Assembly (NCBI RefSeq): GCF_018977255.1
Contig: NW_024704749.1
Coordinates: forward strand, 13,888,001-13,952,000
Length of the DNA stretch: 64,000 nucleotides
Direction of reading: 5' to 3'
From: Callorhinchus milii
Taxonomy: Eukaryota
Both the position numbers and the translations under genes were made by a program. The notes beneath the pieces are model-generated. The model was not told the DNA's origin. It did not search any database and saw only the letters and a program-made list of their open reading frames with translations. Positions 25,215 through 45,185 of the stretch are shown here, in pieces; the first letter of the stretch is position 1, and each line of letters begins with the position of its first letter.

Positions 25215-28200
25215 TCAAGTTATCACTCGTTTAGAATAAACGTGAGTGATGTAAAGCTGATGTTTTTTCACCCATGTCTTAATTATCAAAGATTCGACCT
25301 TACGAGCTAACGTAACAGCTGCTGGATCACGAGGATGAGAACCTCTGAAAGAGACAATTGACCAATTGTTTTGATTTAAATAAACCTCTTACTTCAAACA
25401 CATATACACAGTAGCAAGACGCTGGCTATTCTGGGCACTTCACTTTTCAATGACAATGGTTTTATAGAATCTTTACCTTGGAATATGCAGAAACAGGTCA
25501 AACAACTGGTCTATGCCGGTGTTTATGCTCCACATGAGCCTCCTCCCTGCCCTTCTTCAACTAACCCTTCAAGCAGAAACTTCCCTATTTGATCTATTGG
25601 GGACTATTTTATATTGATGGCCTCTGGTTTTGGTCTCTCCCACAAGTGAAACTTCTTCCCTATGTCTATCCTATCAAAACCTTTCATCATTTTAAATGAT
25701 CAGGTCACCCCTTACCCTCTTTTCAAGAGAAGAGCCCAAGTAGATTCAGCCTTTCCTGATTGGTATAACCCCTCAGCTCTGGGATCATCCTTGGGAATCT
25801 CCTTTGCACCCTCTCTAGTGCCTCAACATCCTTTCTGTAATGTGGGGACCAGAATCTTGTGATAATTTGTCCAATGGCATCACAGGTATAAATTGACTTC
25901 CAAGACCTAACTGGTCATTCCATGGGTACAACAAACATGAATTTGAACTTAAATCTCAAAAGCGCTGCATGGGATTTAGGTAAAGTGAAAGTAAAGCTTA
26001 GGGACTGTATTTGTAGGCCAATGAGACAACAATTTGCACGCAGCAACGTCCTACAAGCGGCCAAGAGGTGAATGACCAATTTTATCTTGTGGATTATTGG
26101 CTAAAATATTGGGAGAATCTCCCTTCTCTTTTCAAATAGCGCCATGGGATCTTTAATGCCTAATTGAACAGACAAGAGCTCAGTTTAACGTCTCATCCAA
26201 AGGGACAGCATCTCTAACAATGCAAGTCTCGCAAGACTCGGTTCAGTCAACTCACCTCAGATCCAGATGGTGTGCTGCTCCATCGATGATGAGAGCAATC
26301 ACCGAGGAACTCACGTTTTTGAGTACCTATTTCATACATACAGAAAAAAATTACTTTGTGCACCACATGGTATAAATTTTCATTGTATAAATATTTAATT
26401 GTCCAGTAACTGAAATGTAATCATGTTCCACTGGAATGGGATGTTTTGTCTTCATGCAAAATAATAGACTATGATTGAAACCGATTTTGATTTGTAGGAG
26501 GCCAACTGCCAAGAACCACCACTCTTGAATTTAGTAGCTGTCTCAAAGACTTAACATTTTAAACCTATCACAGTGTAACAGATACTTACACCACCATTTG
26601 CCCATGGATCCAAGATGCCATTGGAAAATATTATATTGCTTGCAGTAGTCAAATCTGCAATAACACATTAGATGGTAGTAACATACTGTATGCAGCACAA
26701 AGAAACAACAAAATGTAATAATTAATGTACAGTAAGTTACCATTTCCCCAGTATTGTAGTTTTAACCAATCTTGGCTTGGTCTCACACCCCATTTTCTGT
26801 GGCAATATTCCTCTCTCATGGTCTCAGTGAAGGGCATGGCAGGGAACATGTCTGTGAGACCATTACTTTCATACAGTAAGTTGATTTCAGTGCAAGCCTG
26901 AAAAAAAATACAAGGAATATTTTACTCATTGAACTAAAATATTTACCTTTCCAAAGTACCCAAGTTTAATTGGTGTGGTTTGTTTTCCAGCATTGCCATT
27001 TGAAACGCCATGTTGTGATTTTGTACCTTGGTTAAAGAGCCGCTTGTGAATAGTGTGCTGTTTGGCATTCCCCCTTTGTGGACATAATTCACAAGATAGC
27101 ACAGGAAATCTTTAGAATGTCATACAACAAGCAAATTCTAATTGTTTTGACTCACTCTACCTCTCTTCATCCCTTCCACTCAGGGAAATTAGTATTTTAT
27201 ATTTTGTATAAAGTGCCATAAATATACGTAGGCTTATTTATTTAATAATTGGTTATAATAAATTAAGATAGTGGCATTTGGTCTGATGTCTAAAAATAAA
27301 TATAATTACTTTTCAACATGTGACTTAAGTGCCTACTTTCCAAACATTAGCAAAAAGTGTACATATTATGCACTGTAAAGTATTTACACAGATAGCATAC
27401 ATTTCCATTAATGTGAAGTCTAATGGAAATCCGTCTAATTTCAATCCCAAATTGTGCACACAGCTCATCTTCACTGACATTAAATTAATCTAAATTGATA
27501 AATATTTTTATGTTTAACAAGCTGTCTGAGTTCCATCAATTGGCACACATTTACACAAACACAGAACATGTCAATCTGGTTTCAAATAATTCATGTGTAA
27601 ATCGTTCTGAAATCAGCATTCCAATTCTGTGAATGCATACATTTTATACATTAGCACAAAATAATCAGTCACATGATAGAAAAAGATGAAAAAAGGAGTT
27701 GTATATATATGTATATATATGTGGAAGAAGTGAGTTTAGGTGGGCATCATTTCTTTGGTTTGTTGCAAAACAATACTTTCGTATGTTTGTCTTGTATTTT
27801 ATGACCTCTTACAAATCATTCTAATCGATGACCAAAATAAAAAGCACAAAAATCATGCTGTATGATAGGGCAATAAGGCAATAACAATACATTAAAGTAA
27901 GCTTACATTAAATTAAAATCTGTTTAAATTCAGAGGTTTTGAATTCTTGAACACAAAGTTACAATAAAGGAGATTTTCACAATTTACAACCTTACTACTA
28001 TAATCACATTAGAGGCATTAACTAATGCACCTTTTCTACAATTTATAATGACGGTAATGTTATGCTGCACTTCTTCCACATGTTATAAATCAATACAGAA
28101 AAGTACAACTACCTGAAAATCCCACGCCTGACCTTCTGAACCCAGGGCACAGCCAGTTGGATCAGCACAGGGCATAAACTGCGTATAGATATCGAAACAC

Positions 28201-31200
28201 CTTAAATCCCCAGAAATATTGTAATAGATTTCTGAAAAAAGAATATTGGGGAAAAATAACAGGAATATCGACTGCCAGTTGCTAATTTTACGTACAAATA
28301 AAATTTGTACATACTCTACATGTAAAATTTTCAGTTAATATTGCAAATTAACACAACCACCTATTCAAGTTTCAGGCACACAATCATAGAATTACATAGA
28401 ATGAAACAGGCCAATCAATTAGTCTGTGTCAGTGTACCAAATGGATAATTTTACTGGAAGCGGAACAATGTAGGAATAAACGATAAGAGTATAATATCAA
28501 TTATAGAGTATAAAGCGTATTTATAATAATAATAATCCTTGCATTTGATATAGCGCTTTTCACGTCGGGAGGACATCCCAAAGCGCTTCACAGAACACAC
28601 TGTAAAGTGAATTGACTGTATATTTGTGGGCGAACGCGGCAGCCAATTGTGCACAGCAATTCCCACAAACAGTTGTAGATTGAAAATGACCAATTTATTA
28701 TTGTTTTGTTTTGGAGGGATTATTATCAGGTGTGTGGAGTAAGAAAACTTGCCCAAGGTTTCGCCCTGACCTGCCTGGAATTGAACTCCGGTCTCTCGCT
28801 TGCAAAGCGAGTGCTCTAACCAGAGCTACAGGACTCCACAGCTTTATACTGAACGAAAGCTATACTTTTCAAAGACAACAATTGCTAACATTACACTCAA
28901 TTGACTTACTGTACAGGTAACATAAAGGAATTTCAAATATATATTCAATTCGTATAATAATCCTTTGATAATCTTTGCAAATGCAAGTTACCCCTTAAAA
29001 AGTTCACTTACCACTTACAGAATATACACAGGCAAAAGGTTAGTTGAAATTCCTATTGGCTGGTGATAGTTTTGCACTAAGAATACAGATAAAACTAAAC
29101 ATAGAATCACCTTTGAAGCTCACAGAACTCTAGTTATATTTTTAGCAGCATTTCAACAAACAGTGCTGGTCAAACAAATGGAAGTTTTTTTTTCTACATG
29201 GTTCAAACTATTTTAAAAAGCCAAACAGGAATGCTGACTGATAGCATGACCTTTGAAATACAGAACGAAAGCTGTGTTGGTCAGCAAGTGACAATACGTA
29301 GCTAAATGCCAACGTCATTTCATTTGTCCAGTAAGTAGTCAGACATGTTCAGGCAAGTACTGCTGACACACACATTACCTGCTCAAGATAAAACACTAAA
29401 GGTGGAACTAAGCAGCAAGGTTGAAAACATCTCACTGTGTCCAAGGCAAGAAAAAAGGGAATGAGCAGCAATATGTTTTGTAGAAGCTGCGACCAATGAA
29501 CATTTTGTGATATAAGACAACGGCTACTAATCGTCAAAGATGAGAGGAGTATTTGTACTTTGGTAGACTTTCATTACCTTAACTGGACAGACTTCTCCAT
29601 AGCTACAGGTAGTGAAACAAACCAAGCACCGAGGCATCTTCAAAGAATTGTGGTGTTGGAAGAAGCAGGACGATCAGAAAGGTATTAACGGCAGTAATGA
29701 TTACTGAGTTCATTCGTCTTGTTCAGATTGTTTAAATATCATATGACATAACTAAAGTACTAAAGCAAACAGAAGAGATTCAAGTATTTATTCTTTTACG
29801 GATTTTAAATATACTGTAGTTTGTCATTTTTTTCTCGGTTGGAGATTGATCAGGTTCTCGGTTAGAGATTGATCGGATTTGAATCAAGTTTCTCACTTTT
29901 ACCTGACTTGAATAAGTGGCTGCCAGCTTTGAACCAAAATGAACAATAATCACTGGAAGAATTAAGGTAACAACCAAATTTACAGATAAATATCGTCAGA
30001 AAAGGATTACAGAACAGCAGTAGAACAAAGGAGTAAGAACAATAAAAATGAAGTTGAAATGAAATAAAGGGAAAGCAGCTTATTTTTAAACTTAAAATTA
30101 TGTTTTTGTAATATTTTAGTGGTTGAATATTAGACTGAGGCCCTCCTACTTGGCTCCTGTCAGTGCTCACACCATTGCTATTCATGGATGCATTCTCCAC
30201 CTCACTGAGCCAGTCCAGCACCAGTCCAGAACCTTGGTGTCTTGTTCGACTCTCAACTCTCTTTCAAACCCCACATCCGTACCATTACCCTTTCTGTTTC
30301 CTTCCATCCCTTGCCTCCTTTAAGGACCATCTCAATAGCTTCCTCTTTGACTGTGCCTTTGACCACCATCCCAACTCCACTTCCCTTGTCCTCTACCCCT
30401 CTTGACTATAACCCCAGCTCGAGGAGTCCCGAAATGAAAGGTGCTATATTATATATATATATTATATATATATATACACACAGTATATATATATATGCTA
30501 TTTGTTGTTGTTCCAGTTTAGGAGCTGAAAAGTGCAGAAGTGATAGGCCTCTAAAGAATGGAGTCTTTGGGACTACCTTAACTAGCATTAAGTTAGTTGT
30601 AACATAGAAGATGAATCTTTTAAGACATTGCTTTATACTTGTCTGACATTTGAAACTCTTACATAGCATTACAGCGTACTGACATTATGTTTTTTGTACC
30701 AAGCTGCAGCTTGTAACAGCAAAAATACTGCCAGATGGTTGAAGAACTACAACTCCTAAAACAGCTTTCTTCCACCCTCAGAAAAATGTCAGACACTTTA
30801 CAGAACTGTTTAGAACATCAACCACTTGTATCAGACGCCTACCCGGATAAATTACTGGAAGGTCTCTTCAACTTGCGTACGAGAAATATCCTGTGTGATA
30901 TTATGCTGGAGGCGGAAGGAATCACCTTTCCAGTACACAAAGTCATCTTGGCATCTGTGAGCAGTTACTGTAAGCTACTGTTTGGTGCCAAAACCGCAGC
31001 TCCAGGGAATCAACAGAATATAGTTATTAAATTGAACAATGTTAGTGCACGAGGACTCAAACACGTGCTGGATTTTGTTTATTCAAACAGACTCAACCTT
31101 ACTTTAGACACGATAGAAGAGATACTCAAAGCAGCAGAGATTTTGCTCGTCAGGGATGCAATCAAACTATGCTTTAAATTCCTTGAAGAATGCCTTAGTC

Positions 31201-34200
31201 AGAGAAACTGCATGGACATTGTTAAAATAACCCAAAAATCTGGGCCACAGGACTTAAAACAAAAGGCAGCTTCGTATGTGGGTCAGTACTACAAACACAT
31301 TTTGGGAAATCATCGCTCTCTGGTAGAACTGGATAAAGTAGCTCTTTGTACAATCCTGGACGATAATGGCATACAAGGCTACAGTGAACTGGAACTGTTT
31401 GACTGCACAATACGGTGGCTATATCATGATGAGAACAGGTTAAAGGATGCAGCGGAAATTCTGAAAAGAATTCGGTTCTGCCTCATCCCAGCAGCCAAAC
31501 TGCAGAAGTGTGTTCAAGAAACATCGCTCATGAAAACTAATCTCCAATGTCACAGATACCTCCAAGAAGCACTAAGTTACCATTCCCACCTGTACGCCCA
31601 GCCGCTCATACAGTCGGCACGATCTCAGATCCGCTCGATCACTGATCATTTGGTGATTCTTGGAGGGCGTACAAAGGATAACAGAATTTGCAGCGATGTT
31701 TGGGTTGCAGATGAAACTGGCAGTTGCTGGAGAAAAATGGGGGAAATGTGCATTCCTTTGTACCATCATAAGGTGGTGGTTGTAAATGACTTTGTGTTTG
31801 TTATTGGTGGGCAACACAGATTCGAAGCCAATGGAAAACAACCGTCAAACGAGGCAAGTGTCTTTATAAATTGGGTGCCAGATTAATGATGGGATTTTGA
31901 ATTAGACCCGTGTCTGTGGGATTAAGTTATGAATTACATAGAATGTTATAGCACAGAAACAGACCATTTGGCCTAAGTAGCCCATGCTGGTGGATATACT
32001 CTCCACGAGCCTCCACCCCTCTTCTATACCGCTCTACCTCCTTCCCTCTTCTAAATGCTATACAGTTTACCCATTTCTATATTCAATATTCAATTTATAA
32101 ATAAATGCCTGTATAAAAAGATCTTAAAAGTCTTTTAAGAAAATAGATTAAAAGTACACAATGTGAAACATATTTAGGCCTAGTGTTGAAGTAGGTTGAC
32201 CCATCTAACTGCTTCGCTTTCCATCAGGTTTTTAGGTTTGATGTCAGGAATAACTCATGGCTGCAGGTTGCTGGAATGCTGGAAAGGCGTACACGTTTTC
32301 ATGCGGACACAGTTTTAGACCACATCATTTCGGTGGCAGGTGGGACAATTCAAGGAAACCTCACCAACACAGTTGAAGAATACAAGCCTGTAGAGAACAA
32401 GTGGCAATTTGCAGCACCATTCCCAGTGGCGGTGGCAGACCATGCAGGGGCTGTGCATAAAGCCATCTTGTACATATCAGGTGAGATTGGAGATGGTGCT
32501 GTCGCTATCCATTACATGTTTTTTTTTAGAAAATGTAAATTAGTGTCAGTAATCCTGACGTCATTAATAATAATCCTTGTATTTGACATGGATTTGACAT
32601 GTAATCACTTTCTTATCACACTAATTAGGTGGATTTTCAGCAGGGGTAACTCTGAAAGATATATATAGCTATCTCCCAAGACTACAAAGGTGGATCGTCA
32701 ACAGAGCCATGACATTTGCCAGGTGTGACCACGGAATGGCTACCATTGGAGACAAAATATTCTGTGTAGGAGGAAGAGCTTTAAACTCAGTAAGTGAAGC
32801 TTTAAATATTTACGTTTTTACTTAAAATTCAAAGTCAGTACTTGTTATTTAATGCATACTAATAGTTTTATAGCATGTTATGACCTCAATGACTGCTCTT
32901 TTGAAGTAAATTCTTCATCTAAGAGCAGTCATCAACAGATCAGGTGGGACATCAACATTAATATCAATAGGATGCTGAAATTATTAGGTAATGAGGACAA
33001 TTCATTATTTTCACAGTAGTTTATACTCATTCAAATGATAACACATTTGGGATAAAAATAGAGGAAACTGAATGGAGACATCACTGCGAGATACAAATGC
33101 CTAAATAAATCTATTGTTTAATTACTTTTAAACCAAATTTGAATAATGCAGAATATAAAAATATTGTCATTTTAAATGAAAACTACTCTGAAGTGTGAAC
33201 TGTTAACAGCATGTGGTGATGTTACTAGGAGACGTTTGTTTACCATACACGTGCCACCTGTTCTTATTACATTATGACATTTGCAGGCAGCAAAAAAATT
33301 TTTTTTAAATGGTCTCACATTGTATTAAAGTGCTTTTTATTTTGAATTATATTAATTTTTTTAACTAAGATCCACTCATTTCTTCTACAGTCAAGCGAAT
33401 GGGTTCACGTAAATGAAACAGAATATTATGTCCCTGGAACGGACCAGTGGACCACACTTAAAGTATCTCCCTTCAACTGCTGTCAATTCAGCACCTCAGT
33501 TCATAATTCTAAACTATACATCACAGGTGGAGGCTCTCTGCATCAAATGATGAAAAAGGATAGTGTCTTTATCTATCACCCTGAGGCCCGCAGGTGGGAA
33601 AGAGTAGGAGCCCTACCTCTCCCACTGATGGATCATGCTGCCTGCACACTTAAACTCTGTGATGAAGTTTTGAACAAGTTGAAGCGAGAGGAGAGAGTAC
33701 ATCCGCTCCTTGGCAGCAAAAAGAGTTCTACCCTCAAACTACTTGTAACCGATTAGTGTGAGATACAATAACAATATATGCACATGTGAATGAATGAAAA
33801 TTAAAAATGGAGCTATGTGCCATAGGAAAGCACAAGACTTGTAGTGAAACCTTTTAACAAAGCCATCAGCCCACTGTTTAATTTTGTAGTCTATTTAGAC
33901 ATTTGCATTTTTCTTATAACCTAAATATACGTACAGCTTTGTTTATGAAACATCGCTTCCTGTGTTATGTTACATTAAGTACTTTTGTTTGCCTTATAAA
34001 TTAAAAGCATTACAATTTTAACAGTACTGCTGAACTTCATATTGGCCATTGACATTAATTTTTCACCAAAAGATGCTGGGAAATCAAAATCACTTAGCTG
34101 CATTACATGCACATAAAATAAGCAATGCCAGGGAATTAACTGCAGTAATTTCATCAACTAGTTATGTCCAAAGCATCATTTATAATCCAGATCGAGTGTA

Positions 34201-37200
34201 TGGCTGATTATCTGCCAACATTTTTTACAGCAATACTATCCCTCAGTGTCCATTATACATTTGAAAATAGCAAGCTTACCTAAACCTGCTCGTAAGGCTT
34301 CGATAGGATCAGGAATTAATTCAATAATACGGCAGACAATCTAAAGAGAATAGCATTATTAATAAATTATACAACAGCAAACATGTATATGATTCCCTAA
34401 ACTTCTTTTCCTGCAATAGGATTTTCAAAATACTAATGTTATCAAGGGCTGGGAATTCAGACTAGTTTTAGCATTCAAACTTTCAAAATCATTTTATCTT
34501 ATAACGTAATAACGCATATGTTAATTGTGGAAATGTCTTAAAATTCTAATCTGGAAGCTGGTTATTTTTTAAGACCAGTGGAAAACTTGCATTAAAATTA
34601 ATATAATAAAATAATAAAGGATTTTAAAAAATTCCACAATTCTGCACAATCATAACAATAACCTTTGCATTTGATAAAGTACCTAATGGAGCTGAAACAT
34701 CAGAAACACACCAGAGGTTTCTGTAAAGTTTAGTGCCTGTATATTTGTGGGCCAACACAGCAACTAAGAGCCCACAAAAAGGCACAACATGAAAAACCAA
34801 ATGCTCTTACAGATTAAGACTATGTGGAATTTCAAAAATATGCAGTGAAAATGTTGTACACTGTAGTGTTTATTTACAGATAAATGATAAATATTGTGAT
34901 TCATTGCAAACGATTATTTTAATAAACAAACAAAAATATCCTCTGATATACATTCTGGAATTTTTAAAACGTTTTTGTGAAAAATAAAATCCAAGACTTG
35001 ATGCTTACATTCACTGGATTTTCAGGTAAACTTCTTGGTGTATTCATCTGGTAAGGATAGTTGTACATCGCTATAACTGTAAATCCATTTCTTGCCCATC
35101 CATAAAGTCGTTCAATATCTTTTAGAGACATTACTGCTTCACACAGATGCATTTTGTTTGTGATCTCATTCCATTCTGTATAACACCAATTTTGAATGAT
35201 GTAGATTAATGAGAGAAATTCAATTTTTGTCTATTCACTCATCCTCTCTCAAACACTTGGTCACAAGTACGGATTTACATATCACAGTTCCTCAGAACCC
35301 TAGAATTCTACATTTCAGAAATGAGTGTTATTCAAGGTATTGCACAAGCAGATTTAAAAACTGCTGCAAAGCAAACATCTTTAAGTGAAAAGTTTTGAAG
35401 GTTGAACCATAGATATTTACACTACAGAAGGCCATTCGGACCTTGTGCCTATGCTGGCTATTTGAAAGATCAATCCATTCAGTCTAAGTTACTTGCTCTT
35501 TTACCATACTCCTGTATGCTATTCATTTTAACATTTTTCTGGCTCTCCCTTGAAAGCTAATTCGGGTCCAACCTCGATCACCACACACAAAATTGTACTA
35601 TGTACAATTATCTAAAGTTCCTGGATATATATTGATTGTGTACTGATAACTTTCACCAAATGAAAGCTGAGTAAATAAACCCTCAGAAATGAAAATAATT
35701 ATTTTGAACCCTGAACTATAGATACCTTCTTGTTGCCCCAAGGCTTCAAGTGCCTGAAAAGCTTCCCGGATTTGCTGAGGACAGTCAGAGTTGCAACGTT
35801 CAAATTCCTGATCAAAGACAAGATTATAATCATATATAATAATGCAGTCCAGACGAAAACGCCACTAGGGACAGGTTATTGTATTTATTGCATAATTGTG
35901 CCAATTATATCCAAATGCTCAAGGAAAGGGTTTTAGTGAAAGGAGTCTTTTACATTGAAGAGGGGTCGATTTTCGCCATGTGTATTATAGGTCATCAATA
36001 AACTATATGCAGATATGTACTGAGAGGAACAATAGGTATCCCTGTTATGTAATTAACCAACTAAAATAATTTAATTATGCAATAAAAAATTTTTTTTCCA
36101 TTAGTTGTTAAATACATCATTAAAGGAACCTGCAATTCCTGCTCTGCACATGGCACATAATATACGTGATCAACATAACAGAAGGAGTACCCAGAGAAGG
36201 AAACTGCTCTGAACCAAAAGACATTTCTGTATTTATTGATTCCAGTTGTTCGTTGTTACGATGTTATGTAATTATATTGTTCGCATTAATCTCCTTCAAT
36301 TGTTGATCCTGCATTTTTTTTAAAAATGAAATGTTTCTTAGTCATTTTCAGATCTTTCTCATAAGATTATTCTATACGTGCATCCTCTTTTGAACACACT
36401 GATTGACTGCCACCAAATATAAGGTTACAGAGAGCAGACAATGGCAGTCCGATAAATGCAGGTACCACAAAAACATAGTCAAACTATTTCGAGCCTGTTC
36501 TGCCATTCTATTATATCATGGCTGATAGAACAGGCTTGAAGGGCTGAATGGCCTATTCTTGTCCCTGTGTTCCTATGAGCAGTAATGCTCAAACCAATAT
36601 GGACGGAAAAGGAATGCAAGAAGTAAAATATCTTTTAAAAAGACATCCACCTTCAGAGATTTGGTCTTCCGATATGTATATTATTTATTTATTATCTTTT
36701 CAGGTCTATCTAACCCTTACCTCATTCTATGCAGCTGTCTCTAAGTTATCAATATTAGGTACATGAAAATAAACGAGTGTAGCTGTTTGATAAAATCACA
36801 AATTTCGCACAAGAGAAACCACAGGTGCAAACACGTTTTCCTCCACTCTACCACACAAAAAATCTGAAGTGGAACAAACAAATCACCCAGCAGAGGGCTC
36901 TGTACGCCGTTATACTTGCACTTGGCATTGCATCAACCTTTCACGTCAGGTTATCTAAATTGCTTCACAGAATTTACTGTAAAATATTGTTCCTGTGTAT
37001 TTTATAGGCAAACGAAGCAGACACAGGAAGGTCCCATAAAATGTATGATCAATTTTATCTATACTTCTCGAGCACTGCCCTGAAGTGGCAGCCTCGACTG
37101 TGTGAGTTCAAAGTACCAAGATGGGGCTTGAACCCACAACCTCTGCCTCAGAGATGAGAGTACTACCAACTAACCAACTGAACGAGGCTTACACCCGTTT

Positions 37201-40200
37201 GTTGACATCTTTCAACTGACTTACATGTATGTAGAAGTGTCACTGGAGTAGTGATAATACACTGCGGTGCATCAAGTATTTTTCACTTCTTGAAAGTTTT
37301 AAAAGTGCTGTACAAATCTAAATGTGGTGCCTTAATTGCACCGAAGGATTTAGATTGCTCGCTTCTTAAATAATCCCCCCAAAAAGATGGCGCGTACTCA
37401 CTTTAGTTACATCACGGAAAAACTGAGCTGAACTGCCAATGCCTGCTGTGGAGAAGATAGGTGCACTTGAAGCTAGGGCTCCCAATACAATATTGGGATA
37501 TTTCATTCTCATATAGGCACTTAACATTCCGCCATAGCTGGAAAAAAATAGTTATAAGCAGAATATTATCAACAGGTTTAATAAAAAGTAAAAGCATGAT
37601 TAGCAATTATGTGAGTGCTTGGGAATAAAAAACGTACAAATCTAATCATAGTCATTCAGCCCAACATGTCTGTACTGGCTCTTTTAAAGGTGAATCCATT
37701 CAGTCTCATTTACCTGCCTTTTCCCCGTAACCCTGCAATTTACCCCTTTATAGATATTTGTTTAGTACCATTATGAACACTAAAAAGAATCCTGCTTCAG
37801 TACAGTACAATGCAACAAACCTTTAAAATCCCTTACAGTAATTACTATATGTACCTGCCACCAAATGCAATCACAGGACTGTCTTCAGCATCAAGTACTG
37901 TTTTTAGCTTTGTAAGAAGAACCACAAAATCTGCTAAGGCTTGCTCCACGGATAGGAACACAATGTTTGACTTCTCGAATGATTTAGTACCGAATGGAAG
38001 GGATTTCCCATAGTATCGCTGAAGATGGAGAAGTATTGAATGAGTTTGTAATTCTTTTATAAAAAACGTAAAAGCAGATCTTATATTGTTCAAGTCAGTT
38101 ACTTAATCTAAAAATAGGAATTTGCCTTTGTTCATACTCCAACATGTTCATCCAGTAAATGCTCATTCTGCCATAGAAATATATCACAAAAGTAACATCT
38201 ACATTTTGAATTAATGATCAAAAGCATTTTTAAAGAATAAGGCTAGAATGAAACTTACATGTTCAGCAAAAACCACCAAAGCATTCTGCTCTGCTGCCTG
38301 TTCAATGATGAACCCGCTGTTGTTGGCAAAGTTCCAGATATCCCCTTCATTTCCAGTATAGAAGAATATTGGTCCATTGCCTGAGTCCCCAAACTGGTCT
38401 GTAATATTAAGAAACTGCTTAACATTTGGCAGTTTTCTATGTCGTAACTTTCTTTAATGGCATGATAATTTCTGTTGACATAGCTCCTATCATGTTGTCA
38501 AGACATCTCAAAGCACTTCAGATTTTTTTTGTGTAATATAAATAATAAAAATGCAAGGATTATTATATTTATAGCATGGACCAGTGTGCAGTCCATTTTA
38601 AAATTATAAATTAATTCAAACTGGTTTAAAATAACTCATCTGAGAGAAAAAGTCAAATACAGTCAAATCAGCAAATTAAGGAATCTAAAAGAGAAAATAG
38701 AAGCATAACTATGGCAACAATGGGTCACTTTTGATCACCAATTACCTCTCACCCGGAAACTCCGAGGTTGGGGAAGGGGGCTATTTCCCTTCCCATACTG
38801 ATGAGGGGGAGGATGGCCAGGTGACCCAGTTTTGTTTCTAAACTATAAAATCACTAAAAACATGCAATCATAAGAACGCTGGACGAAAAAAGACCAAAGT
38901 CCGTCTAGTTCCCCTACCACCTTCCTGGTGGTCGCCTGCAAATATGTCCCAAACTACCTATGTACTATTTTATTTCCCATTATATTTCCTAAAAGAAAAC
39001 TATCTAATCTGTGTTTGAAAGAATCAACACTTCCTGCAAGGGAGCCTGTGACACAGGTTCACTATTCGCTCACTGAAATAGTGTTTGCGTATAAGAATAT
39101 AAGGATGAACATAACGATTTGAAAGAAGAAGGGAGTTTCTCCCAGTGTTTTGGCCAACAATTCCTGCAAAATAAAATTTGTCATTCACTTTGTGGTTGCT
39201 GTTTGTGGGACAGACTGGTTGCTGCATTCACCAACAAAATACACAGTCAGTATATATATGTGAGAAGGGCGAAGGGGAATCCTCACCAGTAAAGAGATAG
39301 CGCTGAAGGAAAGTTCTGTTATTGCTGGTGAAAGTGAAGTGATCCACGGGCTGGAGGAAATACATTTCTCTCAACATGAGGGTCGGACGCTCGATTTCCA
39401 CTTGGCTGACTATCACCTGCGGGGGTGGGGGTGGCCAGGTGACCTCCTGTACCAGTTGGACATTGGTGGGAGGCATGATACTGGTCTTGATCAGCTCAGG
39501 AGGCTTGGGTGTCTCCTGTACGTTGCTAGTTCCGATCATCTTAGGAAACAGGGGCTTGCCACTCACAATGTTAATTAGCTTAGGAGGCTTCTGTACAGGA
39601 GACTGTACGATACTGCTTTCAATCAGCTCAAGAGGTTTGGGTGTCTCCTGTTCGATGCTAGTTCCGATCATCCTAGAAGACATGGGCCTGCCACGCACGA
39701 TATTAATCAGCTCAGAAGGCTTCTGTACAGGAGACTGTACCGTACTGGTTTCGATCAGCTCAGGAGGCTTGGTGCTGGTGTTTATCAGCTCAGGAGGCTT
39801 GGAACTCTTCTGTACGATGCTAGTTTCGATCACCTTAGGAGACATGGGTCTGTCACCCACGATCTTAATCAGCTCAGGAACCTTCTGAACAGGAGGCTGT
39901 ATAATATTGGTTTCAATCAGCTCAGGAGGTTTCTGTACAGGAGACTGTACCGTAGTGGTTTTGATCAGCTCAGGAGGTTTCTGTACAGGAGACTGTAAGA
40001 TACTGGTTTCGATCAACTCAGGAGGTTTGGGTCTGTCAAGCTTGATGCTGGTGTCTATCAGCTCAGGAGGCTTGAATTTCTCCTGTACGATACTAGTTTC
40101 GATCATCTTAGGAGACGTGGTCCTGTCACGCTCGGTGAAGAACTCAGGAGGCTTCTGTTCAGCAGACTGTACGATTTTGGTTTCAATCAGCTCAGGAACC

Positions 40201-41684
40201 TTGGGTTCGTCAAGCTTGATGCTGGTGTCTATCAGCTCAGGAACCTTCTGTACAGGAGACTGCATTGTACTGGTTTCGATCAGCTCAGGAGGCTTCTGTA
40301 CAGTAGACTGTACCGTACTGGTTTCGATCAGCTCAGGAGGCTGTGGGCTATCAAATGTGATGCTGGTGTCTATCAGCTCAGGAACCTTCTGTTCAGGAGG
40401 CTGTACGATACTGGTTTCGATCAGCTCAGGAGGCTTGTGTCTGTTACGCTTGGTGTCTATCAGGTCAGGAGGCTTGTGTCTGTCTCGCACAATGCTGCTT
40501 GTTTTGAAAAACTCAGGAAGCTTATGTCTCAAATTGGTCTCGATCAGCTGAGGAGGCGTAGGTCTCTCTGGCATGATGCTGGTGTCGATCAGCCAAATGT
40601 CAGTGGCGGTCGGGTAGGTTTCCACCATCTCGACCAGGACGGGTGGCGTTTCTTCTTCTTCTCCTCCTCCATTATCATCTTCTTCTTCCTCTATCTCCAC
40701 CACCGTCACGGTGTCGCCCGGCGTTTCTTCTTCTTCTTCTTCTTCTTCATCGCCGTCGCCTTCATCGTCTTCTTCTTTATAATCTTCTTCTCCCTTCCCC
40801 TCCTCCTCCTCCTCCTCCAGCGCCGTCACATCGTTATCGCCGCCGCCGCCGTCCCCTTTCTCTTCCTTCATCTCCACCACCATCACGTCGTCGCCGTCTT
40901 CCCCTTTCTCTTCCTTCATCTCCACCACCATCACGTCGTCGTCGTCGTCCTCCTCCTCGTCCTCCTCCTCCTTCTTCTTCTTCTTCTTCTCCTCCTCCAC
41001 CGTCACGGTGTTGATGCCGCTGCCGGCCAGGGCGGCCAGCAGCTCTTCTTCTTCCTCCTCCTTCCTCTTTTCTTCATCGCCCCGGCCGCCGCCTTCCTCC
41101 TTCTGCTCCACCACCGTCACGGTGTTGATGCCGCTGCCGGCCAGGGCGGACAGCAGCTCCTCTTCTTCTTCCTCCTCCTTCCTCTTCTCTTCATCGCCCC
41201 GGCCGTCGCCTTCCTCCTTCTGCTCCACCACCGTCAGGGTGTCGATGGGCTGCGAGTACCTCCGCAGGGGCCACCGGGCGGCGGTGGCGGCGGCGGGGCT
41301 CCCGGGAGCCGGGCTCATGGTCGGGGAGACCAGCTGCTGCCCGACGGAGGACCACCAGGAGGGCGAGACGGGCCGCGCGGCAGGAGCGGGAACCGGCCGC
41401 CACCGGCCGCTCACGTCCGAAGGCGACGGGGCGACGGGCGGGCTCTCCCCCCGAGGCGAAGCCGCCGCCGCCGCCGCCTCGTAGGCCCCGGCCCCGGCCT
41501 CGGCCCCGGCCGTCGTCGGGGCCGCCCATCCGACCGCCGGCGGCTCCTGCCGGCCCGCGGGAAGAAGCGCGTCGGCCGGGCCGGCCGGGCCGCCCGGGGT
41601 CAGGGGGGAAGCCGAGAGCCTGAGGGGAAGCCAACAGGAGACGGCCAGCGACAGCTGCAGCGCCAGCGTCCAGTCGACGGCCAT
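25215..41684 (-). CDS. DPP7: Dipeptidyl peptidase 2/7 (peptidase S28) with a very large N-terminal insertion, ~1229 aa
   Basis: Exons 41684-39287 (signal peptide..[16 protein letters not shown]), 38398-38259 ([16 protein letters not shown]), 38018-37855 ([14 protein letters not shown]), 37537-37402 ([15 protein letters not shown]), 35807-35726, 35175-35009, 34340-34280, 28231-28113 ([12 protein letters not shown]), 26897-26741 (ACTE), 26654-26590 ([13 protein letters not shown]), 26326-26256 (GAAHHLDLR), 25344-25215. Phases are consistent, the catalytic triad is present, and the gene lies tail-to-tail with MAN1B1 as in human. Confidence 0.96.
28522..28840 (-). mobile_element. Full-length tRNA-derived SINE
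   Basis: Minus-strand head gtggagtcctgtagctctggttagagcactcgctttgcaagcgagagaccggagttcaattcc (A box, TGC anticodon-like loop, B box), then body and L2-type tail ending in (att)n. Confidence 0.8.
30735..33756 (+). CDS. Kelch-like protein (BTB-BACK-kelch; resembles the KLHL9/13/26 group), ~632 aa, nested in DPP7 intron 7
   Basis: Exons 30735-31853 ([29 protein letters not shown]; SELELF..IRF BACK; first kelch repeats; GC donor), 32228-32480, 32629-32789, 33391-33756 (stop). GG..Y..W kelch motifs; no frameshifts. Confidence 0.93.
39470..40600 (-). repeat. Coding tandem repeat in DPP7 exon 1 (~26 units of 10-16 aa, consensus [16 protein letters not shown])
   Basis: Recurring tcgatcagctcaggaggc on the + strand; all units are in frame. 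Confidence 0.9.
40640..41245 (-). repeat. Acidic low-complexity coding region of DPP7 exon 1 with a 117-nt duplication (RGD x2) and a 42-nt-period duplication ([13 protein letters not shown] x2)
   Basis: Translation [25 protein letters not shown]..ALAGSGIN occurs twice; poly-Glu/Asp runs. Confidence 0.9.
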
Positions 41685-41689
41685 GTCGT

Positions 41690-42660
41690 CGCGCCTCTCC
41701 TCACGGGGCACGAGGAGGAGGAGGTGGGGGTTTGGGCGGACGCTCTGCCTCGCGCCTCCTTCGCCGCCTGCCCTGCCCTGCCCTGCGCGCGCGGGGGGCG
41801 AGGGGGTGGGGTTTGTGGTTGGGGGGGGGGGGGGGGGAGAGGAGCGAGCGCGAGAGAGAGAGGGAGAGAGGGCGGGGGCGGCGCCACGCGACCCAACCGT
41901 CAGTCAGTCAGTCGATTGTTCCCGCTTCGTTTTGAACAGGCGAACCTGCGCGCGCAGCCAGACCCCTCCCCCCTCCCCTGATCCCGCCCCCTCACTCGCG
42001 CACGGGCTGTCTCCTCCCCCACGTGATCGGCTGGGGCGGGTTTTCACGCCCGACGGAGGCGGGTTTCACGCCCCAATCGGGCGGGTTTCCCCCACCACCA
42101 ACCCAACACCCAACACCAGGTTCCTCTGCATCTCAGAAGGCTCGCGCTTTGGGGTCCACTCTCCCCCCCCCCACCTCACCCCCCCCCACACACTCCCCAC
42201 CCAGGACAGCAACGACAACTCGCCAGCGCGTCTCGGGGCGCTTAACCCTGAGCCGTGGGGGCGGGGGGTTGGGGGTGACCATAAGCCGAGACCCAAGAGG
42301 AAGGTCTCCGGTGGGGTTTCCAAAGGAGGGGTCAAGGCGGGGAGGTCGCGGGAGAAAGCAACTGCACCTCGTGCTTCTGAAAGGCGCCTCTGGCAACGCG
42401 CCCGCAACCCCCACCCCCACCCCTCCCAGCGCCGACCCCCCCCCACCCACCCCATCCCACGACGCCCCCCAGCGCGGCGTTGGAGGGTCCAGTTTAGACC
42501 TTGTGGATCCACAGCCTTCTGAATCAGGGGCTGGAGGGCAGACACGGCCGCTAATTTGCCCGCAGCGACACCCGTTCCCCGAGCGGCCCGTCTTCCCAAC
42601 GTTACGGACGCGATAAGGCGGTTTTAAGACTGCGATCAAAGCCGTAACATTAAGCCCCGC
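41690..42660 (-). promoter_or_regulatory. CpG island, probable DPP7 promoter; CLEAR-like E-box TCACGTG at 42020-42026
   Basis: CpG-rich region directly upstream of the DPP7 ATG (gacgacATGG, strong Kozak); GC boxes, CCAAT near 42073, TCACGTG on the minus strand. Confidence 0.6.
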
Positions 42661-45185
42661 GTCCTCCACCGTGACAACTTGCGGCAATTTTGGGGAAACA
42701 ATGAGCTCTGTGGGTTTGGACATAGAGAGTGAATGGTAATTATTAATGACATTGCCGTCACTGTCTTTGTCCACTGACCTGCTAAATAATTTGATCGCAA
42801 CAGAAAACAAATCATCGACCCTATAAGAGCTGTTTTGGCATTTCTACACAAAAATAAAGCCACAACAAGCTTAGAGCAAAATGATTACAGGTTTGTCTTA
42901 CTGTAATATAATATGCATTATATTACGAGACAATTTTATTTGATTTTTCACATTTTCCTTTCCTATGGTATCTACCCAAGGTGCCTTTTGTGAGCCTCTC
43001 CAACTCAACAGTTTCCCTTCAGAAAACAATAAGAATTGGGTCACTCAATCCACGACTGTTTGCGGGGACGCTGCTGTGCACAATTGGCTGCCACGTTTTA
43101 AAAGAAGAATAAAAACCTCTATAAATCCTTCCAGTAGCATCCTTCCAAATGCACAAACAAAGCCGCCCGTGTTCCTAAAATGACCTCTTACGACATCTGC
43201 GCACAGTAGAGAGTGTTATTGTTTGATAGAAACTACTGTGTTGATGCAACATTGGAAAAAAAATTCCACTAACCATACGATACGCATTTCTCCCCTTTCT
43301 TTTACGGGAATGTTTTTTGTTATTTACCACCTGCTCTTCATTATTGGGTTTACTGGTATCCGTACATGCTCGTGCATCAAAGCCCGCTAATTTGCTCATT
43401 TATCTGTGCTTAAAAGAATTCTAAGAGACATCAATACAGTGACGCGTTTATATTATGTGGTATTTCAGAGCAGGTTCAAGTAGAACCAGTTTAATTTTGG
43501 TGGGATCCTGCCTCATTTAAGGCAGCAGACAGGTCTATCCTGTCAGCCTTTCTGCCCCCACCCTTTGGAACTCATCCCGCAGTCCCTTTGCCTTGCGCCT
43601 TCCCTTGCACCCTCAAGGCCCATCTCAAGACCCTCCTCTTCGATCGGGCTTCAAGGTCACTCCCTACCCTCTACCTTACCCTCCCTGCCCCTCATCCCTC
43701 CTGTTCTCAAGTACAGCTCGGGTCCAAATCCCTGACTGCTCCGTGCCTTGGGACGTCCTCCCGATGCTAAACGTGCTATACAAATATAATTAGTTGTTGT
43801 TGTTACTGTGTGGGATAGAACCCAAAGCAATAAGAATGACATTGAAACAGCTGTGCGCTTGTCAACTCAAACAGGTTTTTGAATTACAATGTATGATGAA
43901 TTATAAAACACAATGTAAACACACCATTATACTGAATTATCTTGAAGCTCTTCCAAACAATCTTGTTTGTATTACCATGTAATTAGTATACGCAGGTCAG
44001 ACAGCCTCAAGATGTTTTTACAAGTCATCGTGTCGGCCTCCTAAAACAGTAAATAAGGAATAAATATTAAACTATTCTTGAGCGTAGGAGCATAGCTCAA
44101 TCCACGGCTGTTTCTGGGCCCCTGGAGTGCACAATTCGCTGCCGCGTTTCAAAATATATTACAAAATATACAGTCAATTCACTTAACAGTGTATTCTGTG
44201 AAGCGCTTTGAGACGTCTCGACAACACGATAAGGCGCTGTATCAATTGCCAGGATTATTATAACGGCACTCTAACCACAGCAATAGAATGCAGTTATAAT
44301 AGAAAGAGACCTTCCAAGCTTAAAACCTTCAGCATGTTAACTAACGTCTTAAGTATGAGCAAAACCAGTGGGGCTTAGAGGCTATTCATGAACTAGAAAT
44401 TTTTCCATCTGCTCCAATTCACTCCTTATCTGACGTCCACACATGTGGACTTTCCAGCAGAGGTCACTAACTCACCATAGTTGCGAGAATTCTGGTTGAA
44501 ATTTTCTTCCCCCCCACCACCCACCCACCACCCCGTCAAGGAGATAAGTGTAGCATCCCTACTCGCTGTGATCCCCATTCACATGGGTTCAGATTGGGGA
44601 TTCCTTCCTCGGTTCTTTCTGCTGGTTTGTATGGTTCAGTTTCACTCAAAGCTAAGTAATAACCCTTAGATTTGATACAGGGCCTTATCACGTCGTTAAG
44701 ACGTCTCAAAGCGCTTCACAGAATATATTGTAAAGTCAATTAACTGTGTATTTTGTGGGGCAGGATTAGTTCATAATGTTTTAAAAGATTTTGCAATTTA
44801 AGATAGCTGTATTATTTTGTAATATATAATATCATGAAATAATACTGCGTTTCGCCCACAAAATACACAAAGTCAATCCACCTTACAATGTATTCTGCGA
44901 AGCACTTTTGCATATTTTACAATTTAAAGATAGCTGTACTGTTCCATAATATGAAATAGAATATTATATTAAAAAATTATTTTAAAAAAATGAAAGTATC
45001 TTAAATTGCAGTTTCACTTGGGGGGTGTATTGCATTGGATGGTCAGATTAAGGTCTGGGTCTGTATTACACGTGTGACTTCCTACGATTGGAAGAGTGTG
45101 TGTGTGTCTAATTTGGTTTGCATGATTTGTTGTGGAACTGAATCTCCCTGTAAAATGATAGTGGAAGAAGAGAGAACCCTTTGCA

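What the first reader, a model, noticed from the sequence alone, without database searches (positions are those of the whole stretch)
39287..41684. DPP7 carrying ~745 extra residues between signal peptide and peptidase domain in one 2.4-kb exon
Seen: an ATG in strong Kozak context (41684), a signal-peptide-like [25 protein letters not shown], then an uninterrupted frame of Pro/Ala linker, acidic block and ~26 Pro/Ser/Thr repeats. It runs straight into [19 protein letters not shown] and a good donor at 39287. All downstream exons and the GGSYGG / DPW / AHHLDLR triad are intact, giving ~1229 aa. Known: vertebrate DPP7 is a ~490-aa lysosomal X-Pro dipeptidase with an intron at about this position and almost no propeptide. 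Inference: exonisation or expansion at ancestral intron 1 produced a chimeric protease with a long disordered acidic/mucin-like arm. That arm could act as a propeptide, an extracellular tether or a matrix-targeting module. This is the best candidate for an undescribed system in the window.
Basis: partly seen in the sequence, partly recalled or inferred. Interest (0 to 1): 0.88.

Follow-up and report, generated by a model that had tools for sequence, protein, structure and literature searches.

The report
Long-armed DPP7 protease in elephant shark
The elephant-shark gene for the protease DPP7 really does encode about 745 extra floppy, acidic, repetitive residues in front of the enzyme, and sharks and rays carry an arm of the same kind, but what the arm does is unknown.

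Summary
Observation confirmed. The window is Callorhinchus milii dpp7 (LOC103180401). One 2,397-nt first coding exon (41684-39288, minus strand) is a single open frame. It encodes a signal-like peptide, a Pro/Ala segment, an acidic block, about 24 PELIET-type repeats and the first 29 residues of the S28 peptidase.

A spliced RNA contig joins 39769..39287 to exons 2-4. Further RNA contigs tile the exon up to 40716, and the introns are empty. The 5' 970 nt, including the signal peptide, were not shown to be transcribed.

The arm is not a private novelty. All 12 elasmobranch DPP7 models that reach the domain start carry a 250-1037 aa acidic arm at the same place. 101 other vertebrate DPP7s have a median of 41 residues there.

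Public annotation already holds 5'-truncated versions (978 and 1108 aa). My paper searches found no description.

No arm has a Pfam domain. The two arms modelled (C. milii, Hypanus) have pLDDT mostly under 50. The elasmobranch arm profile does not match the chimaera arm.

Most likely it is a disordered, fast-evolving luminal or secreted extension. "Exonised intron 1" is not supported. The scan's other notes (s1-905064, s1-905137) describe this same stretch.

The parts
41610..41684 (-). Start codon and signal-peptide-like segment (aa 1-25, [25 protein letters not shown])
   Evidence: Sequence read. It is the first ATG after the in-frame TGA at 41906-41904, with no other ATG between. Residues 7-21 form the most hydrophobic 15-aa window of the whole arm. 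No signal-peptide predictor was available. Not shown to be transcribed.
41229..41609 (-). Pro/Ala/Ser/Gly-rich segment (aa 26-152), GC 0.82
   Evidence: Composition. GC at codon positions 1/2/3 is 0.74/0.73/0.91 (aa 1-152). DNA run X5 carries an in-frame +GCCGCC at 41460. The Ensembl model A0A4W3IGN2 starts inside it, at M123. No RNA contig of run X1 was laid here.
40650..41228 (-). Acidic block (aa 153-345; E 35%, D 12%). It holds a 117-nt cassette in 2.3 copies, each full copy with an RGD (aa 162 and 201), and a 48-nt cassette in 2.2 copies
   Evidence: Tandem repeats, composition, RGD positions. AF2 single-sequence pLDDT is 55-75 with a strand-helix-strand-helix-strand pattern at aa 149-234. 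X1 RNA contig record 5 reaches 40716. Read laying skipped 40717-41195 as a repeat.
39375..40649 (-). Array of about 24 units of 10-16 aa ([16 protein letters not shown] and variants), aa 346-770
   Evidence: There are 0 stops in the coding frame against 33 and 45 in the other sense frames. X1 RNA contigs lie at 39287-39769, 39740-39945, 39968-40064, 40035-40238 and 40313-40716. pLDDT is about 30 with no secondary structure.
39288..39374 (-). First 29 residues of the S28 peptidase domain ([15 protein letters not shown]...QRYLFT). The exon's last base is 39287 and the donor GT is at 39286-39285
   Evidence: Sequence. The stretch aligns from residue 5 of the solved DPP2 chain 4ebb_A. The joint 39287|38398 is seen in RNA contigs of X1 (depth 180) and X4.
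38259..38398 (-). dpp7 coding exon 2
   Evidence: RNA joints in X1. Exact match to P0002.
37855..38018 (-). dpp7 coding exon 3 (start of GGSYGG, the catalytic Ser motif)
   Evidence: RNA joints in X1..
37401..37537 (-). dpp7 coding exon 4
   Evidence: RNA joint 37537|37855 in X1..
25215..35807 (-). dpp7 coding exons 5-12: 35807-35727, 35176-35009, 34340-34281, 28232-28113, 26897-26742, 26655-26587, 26323-26255, 25343-25218. These bounds are whole codons; split codons add 1-2 nt. They include DPW (26610-26602), AHHLDL (26275-26258) and the stop TGA at 25217-25215
   Evidence: Exact mapping of P0002. Splice flanks and motifs.
40500..42700 (.). CpG-island-like region over the 5' part of exon 1 and the presumed promoter
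   Evidence: GC is 0.50-0.81 and CpG observed/expected 0.63-1.99 in 250-nt windows. The transcription start site was not determined.

Best explanation
This is the Callorhinchus milii orthologue of DPP7 (DPP2/QPP, peptidase family S28).

Its first coding exon has grown to 2.4 kb. The predicted product is 1229 aa: a cleavable signal peptide, a 745-aa arm, then an ordinary and catalytically intact S28 domain. The arm has three parts: Pro/Ala-rich, strongly acidic, then about 24 PELIET-type repeats.

The arm is the chimaera version of a long, acidic, Cys- and aromatic-poor, probably disordered N-terminal extension. Every shark and ray DPP7 model that reaches the domain start has one in the same place.

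**Shown:** the frame, the splice joints, inclusion of the repeat part in mature mRNA, and the presence of arms across cartilaginous fishes.

**Inferred:**
- Translation starts at 41684, so the arm enters the ER lumen with the enzyme.
- The arm works through bulk properties (length, negative charge, possible O-glycosylation) and not through a fold. It would act as a spacer or pro-region that accompanies the enzyme through the secretory or vesicular pathway. It is probably trimmed in acidic compartments.
- The arm evolves by repeat gain and loss under weak sequence constraint.
For: **Identity of the gene**
- Exon 1 is 100% identical to XP_007894423 "dipeptidyl peptidase 2 [Callorhinchus milii]".
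- Peptidase_S28 scores E = 1.7e-82 on P0002.
- The best solved relatives are DPP2 chains 4ebb and 3jyh (E about 1e-164), ahead of PRCP 3n2z (6e-109).
- The triad motifs are intact.

**Expression**
- Run X1 has a 1969-nt contig at depth 180 that reads 39769..39287 | 38398..38259 | 38018..37855 | 37537..37401. The skipped parts end CT..AC, which is GT..AG on the minus strand.
- Four more X1 contigs tile the exon up to 40716. The last has depth 151.
- X1 depth is 0 in the intron bins 37648-37821 and 38692-38865.
- Run X4, from a second study, also shows the 39287|38398 joint.
- No joint inside exon 1 is listed.

**Coding signs**
- 0 of 1000 shuffles reach 799 open codons.
- GC3 is 0.91 against GC1/GC2 of 0.74/0.73 in the 5' part.
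- Differences among individuals or assemblies keep the frame: +GCCGCC at 41460, a synonymous CAG>CAA at 39417, E245D, and a one-codon Gly indel.

**Same trait in relatives**
- 12 of 12 elasmobranch models that contain the domain start have arms of 250-1037 aa. Most begin with a signal peptide.
- All 13 chondrichthyan arms are acidic (net charge -7 to -102, pI 4.2-5.5) with 27-36% Pro+Thr+Ser.
- 101 other vertebrate DPP7s have a median of 41 aa before the motif, maximum 76.
- Hagfish proteins are 483 and 487 aa long.

**Disorder**
- No Pfam family in the arm.
- In the AF2 model, 656 of 799 residues have pLDDT under 50.
- The Hypanus arm, modelled with an alignment, is under 50 over residues 1-334, while its catalytic domain is mostly 80-97.
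Against: - **5' part not shown transcribed.** No X1 RNA contig was laid on 40717-41684. Part of that stretch was skipped as a repeat and the rest is 58-82% GC. The signal peptide, the Pro/Ala part and most of the acidic part are therefore not shown to be in the mRNA.
- **Public models start later.** NCBI's model starts at M252 and Ensembl's at M123.
- **Atypical signal peptide.** The n-region carries Asp and no basic residue. It was judged by hydropathy alone.
- **No protein-level data.**
- **Weak constraint in the repeats.** Among nine 16-aa units, pN/pS is 0.81 in frame against 0.71 and 1.05 in the shifted frames. Pairwise differences fall evenly on codon positions (91/80/83). There is no sign of amino-acid constraint.
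- **No detectable homology to elasmobranch arms.** An HMM of the conserved elasmobranch blocks does not match the chimaera arm (score -49.9). A common origin is therefore not shown.
- **Disorder evidence is weak.** Low pLDDT from a single-sequence model is weak evidence of disorder.
- **Function is inference only.**
Confidence: 0.6

Rival explanations
1. **Secreted, tethered enzyme.** The arm is kept on the mature protein and works outside the cell as a mucin-like or matrix-binding stalk. It would hold DPP7 in mucus, extracellular matrix or on cell surfaces, for example through the RGD pair and the acidic block. This would turn a vesicular peptidase into a tethered one.
For: - The arm has tandem repeats rich in Pro, Thr and Ser (34% in the repeat part).
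- NCBI names the Rhincodon orthologue "mucin-5AC-like".
- Two RGD motifs lie in a predicted loop between a strand and a helix.
- No furin-type site would release the arm: 0 in the C. milii arm and 0 in 11 of 12 elasmobranch arms.
- Conserved sequence blocks in elasmobranch arms suggest a specific partner.
Against: - The Pro+Thr+Ser share is below that of typical mucin domains (a threshold I recall, not tested).
- RGD is found in 1 of 12 elasmobranch arms. In C. milii both copies come from one 117-nt duplication.
- The repeat units show no amino-acid constraint.
- There are no data on localisation or glycosylation.
Confidence: 0.17
2. **Shorter product.** The mRNA starts inside exon 1, as in NCBI's model, or translation starts at an internal ATG. 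Part of the open frame would then be 5' UTR or promoter CpG island that is open by composition. The 1229-aa protein would not be made.
For: - No X1 RNA contig lies on 40717-41684.
- NCBI starts at M252 and Ensembl at M123.
- GC-rich sequence has few stops. An antisense ORF of 514 aa overlaps the same region.
Against: - A start at M252 or later gives no signal peptide, while S28 peptidases are secretory-pathway proteins (family knowledge, recalled).
- 10 of the 12 elasmobranch models show a signal-peptide-like start at the head of the arm, after I trimmed extra N-terminal residues from some models. The Amblyraja model is N-terminally truncated.
- ATG 41684 is the first ATG for more than 440 nt.
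- The GC3 excess fits coding.
- The repeat part, which is in the mRNA at depth close to that of exons 2-4, would hold many in-frame ATGs as a UTR.
Confidence: 0.13
3. **Tolerated passenger.** The arm is translated but has no function of its own. The linker between signal peptide and mature enzyme tolerates insertions and repeat slippage, because whatever lies there is degraded once the enzyme reaches acidic compartments. Arms would have grown independently in chimaeras, in elasmobranchs and in some amphibians and fishes.
For: - pN/pS is about 0.8 and differences are even across codon positions.
- The elasmobranch arm profile does not match the chimaera arm.
- Arms of very different length and sequence occur in scattered lineages: 89-346 aa in Albula, Arapaima, Paramormyrops, Geotrypetes, Protopterus, Lissotriton and Ascaphus.
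- Arms diverge several times faster than the catalytic domain. For example, arm identity is 0.48 against 0.93 for Chiloscyllium versus Carcharodon.
Against: - Elasmobranch arms keep alignable blocks between sharks and rays, such as PQV.L.IKEVD, E.PVAIQI and GEPEKPKP. This argues for constraint there.
- Every chondrichthyan model has a long acidic arm. None has lost it.
- The frame is kept over 770 codons.
Confidence: 0.1

Closest known systems
Mammalian DPP7 / DPP2 / quiescent cell proline dipeptidase (solved structures 4ebb, 3jyh, 3n0t)
   Same: - The S28 catalytic domain is the same. phmmer gives E about 1e-164 over P0002 residues 520-963.
- The GGSYGG, DPW and AHHLDL motifs are shared.
- A review describes DPP-7 as residing in intracellular vesicles (PMC4129137, passage seen).
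   Different: - The solved chain begins 4-8 residues before the point that matches L771 of the chimaera protein, so it has no arm.
- Total length is about 490 aa against 1229 aa.
Elasmobranch DPP7 gene models (Mustelus 1487 aa, Stegostoma 1261, Chiloscyllium 1148 and 1066, Cetorhinus 926, Rhincodon 921, Carcharodon 901, Pristiophorus 857, Hypanus 789, Narcine 733, Mobula 731, Amblyraja 700)
   Same: - Same architecture: signal peptide, long acidic low-complexity arm with species-specific tandem repeats, then the S28 domain.
- The catalytic domain is 61-67% identical.
- The Mustelus repeats share a P-[DE]-hydrophobic-I-x-T core with the chimaera repeats (BLASTP E = 7e-8; 37 and 15 motif copies).
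   Different: - The conserved elasmobranch blocks are not detectable in the chimaera arm.
- BLASTP against Chiloscyllium and Pristiophorus arms finds nothing below E = 0.1.
- The long poly-Glu block and the Pro/Ala segment are peculiar to C. milii.
- The motif was defined after seeing the data. It is absent from 7 of the 12 elasmobranch arms.
Lysosomal Pro-X carboxypeptidase PRCP (S28; 3n2z)
   Same: Same Pfam family and fold (E = 6.1e-109).
   Different: It is a clearly weaker match than DPP2, so the window gene is the DPP7 orthologue and not PRCP. No arm.
Disordered repeat spacers and acidic sorting proteins: mucin PTS domains, titin PEVK, granins (recalled, not tested)
   Same: Resemblance in composition only: short Pro-rich tandem repeats with Glu, Val/Ile and Lys, and a long poly-acidic stretch in a secretory-pathway protein.
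   Different: - No sequence relation was found. There is no Pfam hit, and only 3 chance-level repeat proteins turned up among 1.84 billion representatives.
- These are analogies for how such an arm could behave. They are not family assignments.

Membership tests
Peptidase family S28, DPP7 orthologue | Peptidase_S28 domain over its full length | tested here: met
   PF05577 scores E = 1.7e-82 on P0002 residues 527-951, covering profile positions 1-432 of 434. P0002 maps exactly to the window exons.
Peptidase family S28, DPP7 orthologue | Catalytic Ser (GxSxG), Asp and His motifs intact | tested here: met
   GGSYGG, DPW and AHHLDL were located in the window exons. They align to the solved DPP2 chain.
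Peptidase family S28, DPP7 orthologue | Closer to DPP7 than to PRCP or other S28 members | tested here: met
   DPP2 chains score 553 bits and PRCP 369 bits. The best database relatives are named dipeptidyl peptidase 2. No tree was built.
Peptidase family S28, DPP7 orthologue | N-terminal signal peptide for entry into the secretory pathway | tested here: inconclusive
   The hydrophobic core at aa 7-21 is the most hydrophobic window of the arm, and a small residue (Ala25) lies before Ser-Pro. The n-region is acidic. No predictor was available, and transcription of this part is not shown.
Peptidase family S28, DPP7 orthologue | X-Pro dipeptidyl-peptidase activity at acidic pH | not testable with these tools
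   Needs an enzyme assay.
Chondrichthyan long-arm DPP7 | An arm of 250 aa or more between signal peptide and S28 domain, acidic, poor in Cys and aromatic residues | tested here: met
   The C. milii arm is 770 aa before the motif, with net charge -75, pI 4.4, 1 Cys and 2.6% W+F+Y. The 12 elasmobranch arms are 250-1037 aa with pI 4.2-5.5.
Chondrichthyan long-arm DPP7 | Sequence blocks conserved among elasmobranch arms (for example PQV.L.IKEVD, E.PVAIQI, GEPEKPKP, WHPYLIKISSG) | tested here: not met
   hmmsearch of the elasmobranch arm profile against the C. milii arm gives score -49.9, bias 79.5. Arms diverge several times faster than the domain, so lost signal is expected even under common descent.
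Mucin-like PTS domain | Tandem repeats dominated by Pro/Thr/Ser and O-glycosylated | tested here: inconclusive
   Tandem repeats are present. Pro+Thr+Ser is 0.34 in the repeat part and 0.27 over the whole arm, lower than I recall for mucins. Glycosylation is not testable here.
RGD plus poly-acidic matrix proteins (bone-sialoprotein-like; idea of scan note s1-905064) | A conserved RGD next to poly-Glu, and relation to SIBLING/SCPP genes | tested here: not met
   RGD occurs at aa 162 and 201 within one duplicated cassette. RGD is found in 1 of 12 elasmobranch arms. There is no Pfam or sequence relation.

The most novel reading that the evidence does not exclude
The arm is an ancient innovation of cartilaginous fishes, present before chimaeras and elasmobranchs split. 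It re-purposes DPP7 by using a long acidic, glycosylated, repeat-bearing N-terminal module to sort, store or anchor the enzyme. Possible destinations are regulated secretory granules, mucus or matrix. The conserved blocks in shark and ray arms would be the docking sites for a partner. On this reading the class has a secreted or tethered post-proline dipeptidase that bony vertebrates lack.
Probability: 0.2. Interest if true: 0.65.

Novelty: new variant of a known kind. Interest (0 to 1): 0.45.

Why it matters
DPP7 is treated as a compact enzyme of about 490 aa. That every cartilaginous-fish model found carries a 250-1040 aa disordered arm in front of it has, as far as my searches reach, not been pointed out.

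If the arm is kept on the enzyme, it would change where a post-proline dipeptidase acts in a whole vertebrate class.

If it is only tolerated, it is a clean natural example of how the stretch between signal peptide and mature enzyme can absorb hundreds of residues of repeat expansion over hundreds of millions of years.

Practically, the public C. milii models (978 and 1108 aa) appear to be truncated at the 5' end and to lack the signal peptide. Related genes are misnamed "uncharacterized protein" or "mucin-5AC-like".

Tried and rejected
- **Pfam on exon 1.** Only a chance-level DHquinase_I hit (E = 0.34).
- **HMMER of the repeat part (425 aa) against 1.84 billion representatives.** Three hits at E = 2e-6 to 5e-4, all unrelated repeat proteins. 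The chimaera's own protein was not listed, so arm-bearing DPP7s are probably represented by proteins without an arm. This blank says little.
- **ESM Atlas, with the chimaera arm and with the Carcharodon arm.** No usable hit.
- **Profile of elasmobranch arms against arms of chimaera, amphibians, lungfish and teleosts.** Nothing beyond signal-peptide-level matches.
- **BLASTP of the chimaera arm against Chiloscyllium and Pristiophorus.** Nothing below E = 0.1.
- **Selection test on the repeat units.** No coding-type constraint. I therefore dropped the idea that the PELIET core is kept by selection on the protein within this array. Its near-identity, including at silent sites, fits recent duplication.
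- **Calcineurin-type PxIxIT resemblance of PDVIVT/PELIET.** Considered and rejected, because the arm lies behind a signal peptide (recalled motif, not tested).
- **Gene fusion or read-through of two genes.** Rejected. There is one exon and one frame, with no stop and no internal joint, and RNA contigs are continuous into exon 2.
- **Assembly artefact.** Rejected. DNA run X5 covers 39264-40716 and 41207-41758 in pieces, with only in-frame or silent differences.
- **Loose ends of run X2 at 40284 and 40670.** They lie at repeat or GAA-rich positions, and I take them for assembly chimeras. Not followed up.
- **Tissue of run X1.** Coded and unknown.
- **Papers.**
  - "dipeptidyl peptidase 2" + Callorhinchus: 0 papers.
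  - DPP7 + shark: 1 paper. It mentions dpp7 once, as a neighbour of a kelch-like gene in bichir (PMC11401434, one passage seen).
  - Accession numbers: 0 papers.
  - Two broader searches were unspecific. None of the 15 papers listed in either holds DPP7.
  - Supplements were closed. The synteny tables of PMC11401434 were not seen.

Full report
**What is there**

The minus strand carries an 827-aa ORF at 39228..41711, the longest in the window.
- The first ATG is at 41684, in the context gacgacATGg.
- It follows an in-frame TGA at 41906-41904, with no other ATG in between.
- From that ATG the frame runs 799 whole codons to a donor, G|GTGAGG, with the last exon base at 39287.

The product of this exon falls into five parts:

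| Residues | Content |
|---|---|
| 1-25 | hydrophobic, signal-like |
| 26-152 | Pro/Ala/Ser/Gly-rich, 82% GC |
| 153-345 | acidic, 47% Glu+Asp, with a 117-nt cassette in 2.3 copies and a 48-nt cassette in 2.2 copies |
| 346-770 | about 24 units of 10-16 aa built on P-P-E-L-I-E-T-S |
| 771-799 | [15 protein letters not shown]...QRYLFT |

All tandem periods in the repeat part are multiples of three. No block shuffle of the exon (0 of 1000) kept any frame open for 799 codons; the maximum was 452. In the repeat array two antisense frames are also nearly open, so the open frame alone would not prove coding.

**Which gene**

A search with exon 1 alone returned one protein, XP_007894423.1, "dipeptidyl peptidase 2 [Callorhinchus milii]". 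It is 979 aa and 100% identical from residue 252 of my reading onward.

Its cluster holds three more models:
- the current RefSeq version, 978 aa, "uncharacterized protein LOC103180401";
- an Ensembl-derived 1108-aa model starting at my M123;
- a truncated 479-aa model.

The 978-aa protein maps letter for letter onto 12 exons between 40931 and 25218, with canonical splice flanks.
- It has a full Peptidase_S28 domain (E = 1.7e-82).
- Its best solved relatives are DPP2 structures (4ebb, 3jyh; E about 1e-164), ahead of PRCP (6e-109).
- GGSYGG, DPW and AHHLDL are present.

The solved DPP2 chain starts only 4-8 residues before the position matching L771, so everything upstream of L771 is extra. With the start at 41684 the protein would be 799 + 430 = 1229 aa.

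Exon 1 was searched by itself, and the rest was checked through stored database proteins.

**Is the insert in the mRNA?**

One call of read laying on 37300-42500 gave contigs of four runs.

*Run X1 (2013, 60 million letters)* behaves as RNA.
- A 1969-nt contig at depth 180 reads 39769..39287, then 38398..38259, 38018..37855 and 37537..37401.
- Each skipped part ends CT..AC, which is GT..AG on the coding strand.
- Depth is 0 in intron bins.
- Four further X1 contigs cover 39740-39945, 39968-40064, 40035-40238 and 40313-40716. The last has depth 151.
- The tool warns that contig depth is a poor measure, so I use it only to say that the repeat part is not a rare by-product.

*Run X4*, from another study, also shows the 39287|38398 joint. 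No joint inside exon 1 is listed.

*Run X5* behaves as DNA, because its contigs run through introns. It differs from the window by an in-frame +GCCGCC in the Ala run at 41460 and by a silent CAG>CAA at 39417.

The older-assembly models differ from the window by E245D and a one-codon Gly indel.

What is missing: no X1 RNA contig lies on 40717-41684. The tool skipped 40717-41195 as a repeat, and the rest is very GC-rich. For the 5' 970 nt, transcription is unproven.

Arguments for the start at 41684 are indirect:
- It provides the only hydrophobic, signal-like segment of the arm.
- GC3 exceeds GC1 and GC2 there (0.91 against 0.74 and 0.73).
- The orthologues put a signal peptide at the head of their arms.

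**Relatives**

I searched the S28 part of the stored chimaera protein among proteins of 538-1713 aa and the 479-aa model among proteins of 263-838 aa.
- *Elasmobranchs.* Every shark and ray model that includes the start of the domain has a long arm. There are 12 models from 12 species, with 250-1037 aa before the F.E.YF.Q..DHF motif.
  - A 13th model (Mobula birostris, 424 aa) lacks the first exon and is uninformative.
  - A Hypanus isoform differs only inside the catalytic part.
- *Other vertebrates.* I tested the 113 proteins that appeared only. Of these, 101 matched the motif, all of them non-chondrichthyan. They have a median of 41 residues before it (5th-95th percentile 25-63, maximum 76).
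- *Hagfish.* The proteins are 483 and 487 aa long.
- *Intermediate arms.* They occur in Ascaphus (346 aa), Lissotriton (178), Protopterus (171), Geotrypetes (140), Paramormyrops (103), Arapaima (97) and Albula (89).

Properties of the arms:
- All 13 chondrichthyan arms are acidic (net charge -7 to -102), 27-36% Pro+Thr+Ser, and nearly free of Cys and aromatic residues.
- Elasmobranch arms share alignable blocks around species-specific tandem repeats.
- They diverge several times faster than the enzyme. Arm versus domain identity is 0.85 versus 0.97 for Cetorhinus/Carcharodon and 0.48 versus 0.93 for Chiloscyllium/Carcharodon.

**Is the chimaera arm the same arm?**

- A profile of the elasmobranch arms does not match it.
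- BLASTP against two shark arms finds nothing.
- Against Mustelus the repeat arrays align (E = 7e-8, 29% identity).
- A core P-[DE]-hydrophobic-I-x-T occurs 15 times in C. milii and 37 times in Mustelus. It occurs 1-2 times in four other shark models and not at all in the other seven elasmobranch arms. I wrote that pattern after seeing the data, and repeats inflate such scores.
- Given how fast arms diverge, loss of signal over the chimaera-elasmobranch split is expected under common descent.

Position and character agree, while homology of the sequence is open. I put common origin at about even odds against independent growth at a permissive site.

**What the arm is like**

- No Pfam family matches it.
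- There are no relatives among 1.84 billion representatives beyond three chance repeat proteins. The chimaera's own protein was not listed, so this library hides arm-bearing DPP7s.
- The ESM Atlas gave nothing.
- AlphaFold2 on exon 1 alone gives mean pLDDT 38.4, with 656 of 799 residues under 50. The one stretch at 55-75 is aa 145-235, the duplicated acidic cassette, drawn as strand-helix-strand-helix-strand.
- For Hypanus, modelled with a 32-sequence alignment, the arm (residues 1-334) stays under 50 while the enzyme is mostly 80-97.
- Among nine 16-aa repeat units, pN/pS is 0.81 and differences fall evenly on the three codon positions (91/80/83). The array keeps its frame but shows no amino-acid constraint.
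- No R-x-[KR]-R site lies in the C. milii arm or in 11 of the 12 elasmobranch arms. The one hit, in Stegostoma, lies in probable model artefact upstream of its signal peptide.
- The two RGDs sit in one duplicated cassette. RGD occurs in 1 of the 12 elasmobranch arms.

**How it most likely works**

*Shown:* an intact DPP7 gene whose first coding exon carries the arm, and an mRNA that contains at least the repeat part joined to the enzyme.

*Inferred:*
- Translation starts at 41684.
- The arm enters the ER.
- The arm is disordered, strongly negative and possibly O-glycosylated.
- It acts through bulk properties as a spacer or pro-region during transit of a vesicular enzyme. A review passage calls DPP-7 a protein of intracellular vesicles (PMC4129137).
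- It is trimmed in acidic compartments.

I give this about 0.6. The rivals are a retained extracellular tether (0.17), a shorter product because the 5' part is not translated (0.13) and a functionless tolerated expansion (0.1).

The architecture and its expression hold. The proposed origin does not follow from the data. Arms at this place are general in cartilaginous fishes and recur elsewhere, and nothing shows that an intron ever lay between signal peptide and domain. That human DPP7 has about 13 exons, with the signal peptide and domain start in exon 1, is my recollection and was not checked.

The gene is also not unannotated. It is in RefSeq and UniProt, though apparently cut short at the 5' end.

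**Novelty and score**

I found no paper on it. The searches were made, plus two unspecific ones. Only open-access full text and bioRxiv were searched, and supplements were closed.

I rate it a new variant of a known kind, with interest 0.45. It is a clear and class-wide oddity of a well-known enzyme with no known role. It does not bear on a long-standing question.

The scan's notes s1-905064 and s1-905137 describe parts of this same stretch, not other DNA.

Noticed in passing
window 30735-31886 (+), within 28232-34281: An ORF of 383 aa with BTB (E = 3.7e-22), BACK (2.2e-14) and the start of Kelch repeats lies on the opposite strand inside dpp7 intron 7. A paper passage notes a kelch-like 9 gene next to dpp7 in bichir (PMC11401434), so the pairing may be old synteny.
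   Followed up: partly
window 38491-39250 (dpp7 intron 1): A highly repeated element. In read laying the depth reaches about 15,900 in DNA run X5 and 250-2,400 in the RNA runs at 38866-39039, with many loose ends and false joints. It is probably a SINE-like interspersed repeat.
   Followed up: no
window 7600-10800: A very GC-rich block (0.74 in 8001-10000) with several overlapping ORFs of 189-475 aa on both strands. The three I tested have no Pfam family. They are probably open by composition, as in a CpG island or GC-rich repeat.
   Followed up: partly
window 40437-41981 (+): An antisense ORF of 514 aa overlaps the 5' part of dpp7 exon 1. It is low-complexity (poly-Phe/Leu/His/Arg) and is best read as a by-product of the GC-rich, GAA-rich sense sequence.
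   Followed up: no
window 41460, 39417, and aa 245 and 295 of exon 1: Differences among individuals or assemblies all keep the frame. They are +GCCGCC (two Ala) and a silent CAG>CAA in run X5, and E245D and a one-codon Gly indel against the older-assembly models.
   Followed up: yes
database proteins P0040, P0043, P0039, P0032 (not in the window): Arms of 140-346 aa also precede the DPP7 domain in Ascaphus (Pro-rich tandem repeats), Lissotriton (poly-Glu/Asp run), Protopterus and Geotrypetes. The Geotrypetes model further holds a long insert within the catalytic domain that is absent from the other DPP7s read here and is probably a gene-model error.
   Followed up: partly
database proteins P0002 and P0004 versus window 40932-41684: The RefSeq (978 aa) and Ensembl (1108 aa) models of this gene start at internal Met codons (M252, M123) and lack any signal peptide. 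The open frame and the first ATG lie further upstream.
   Followed up: yes
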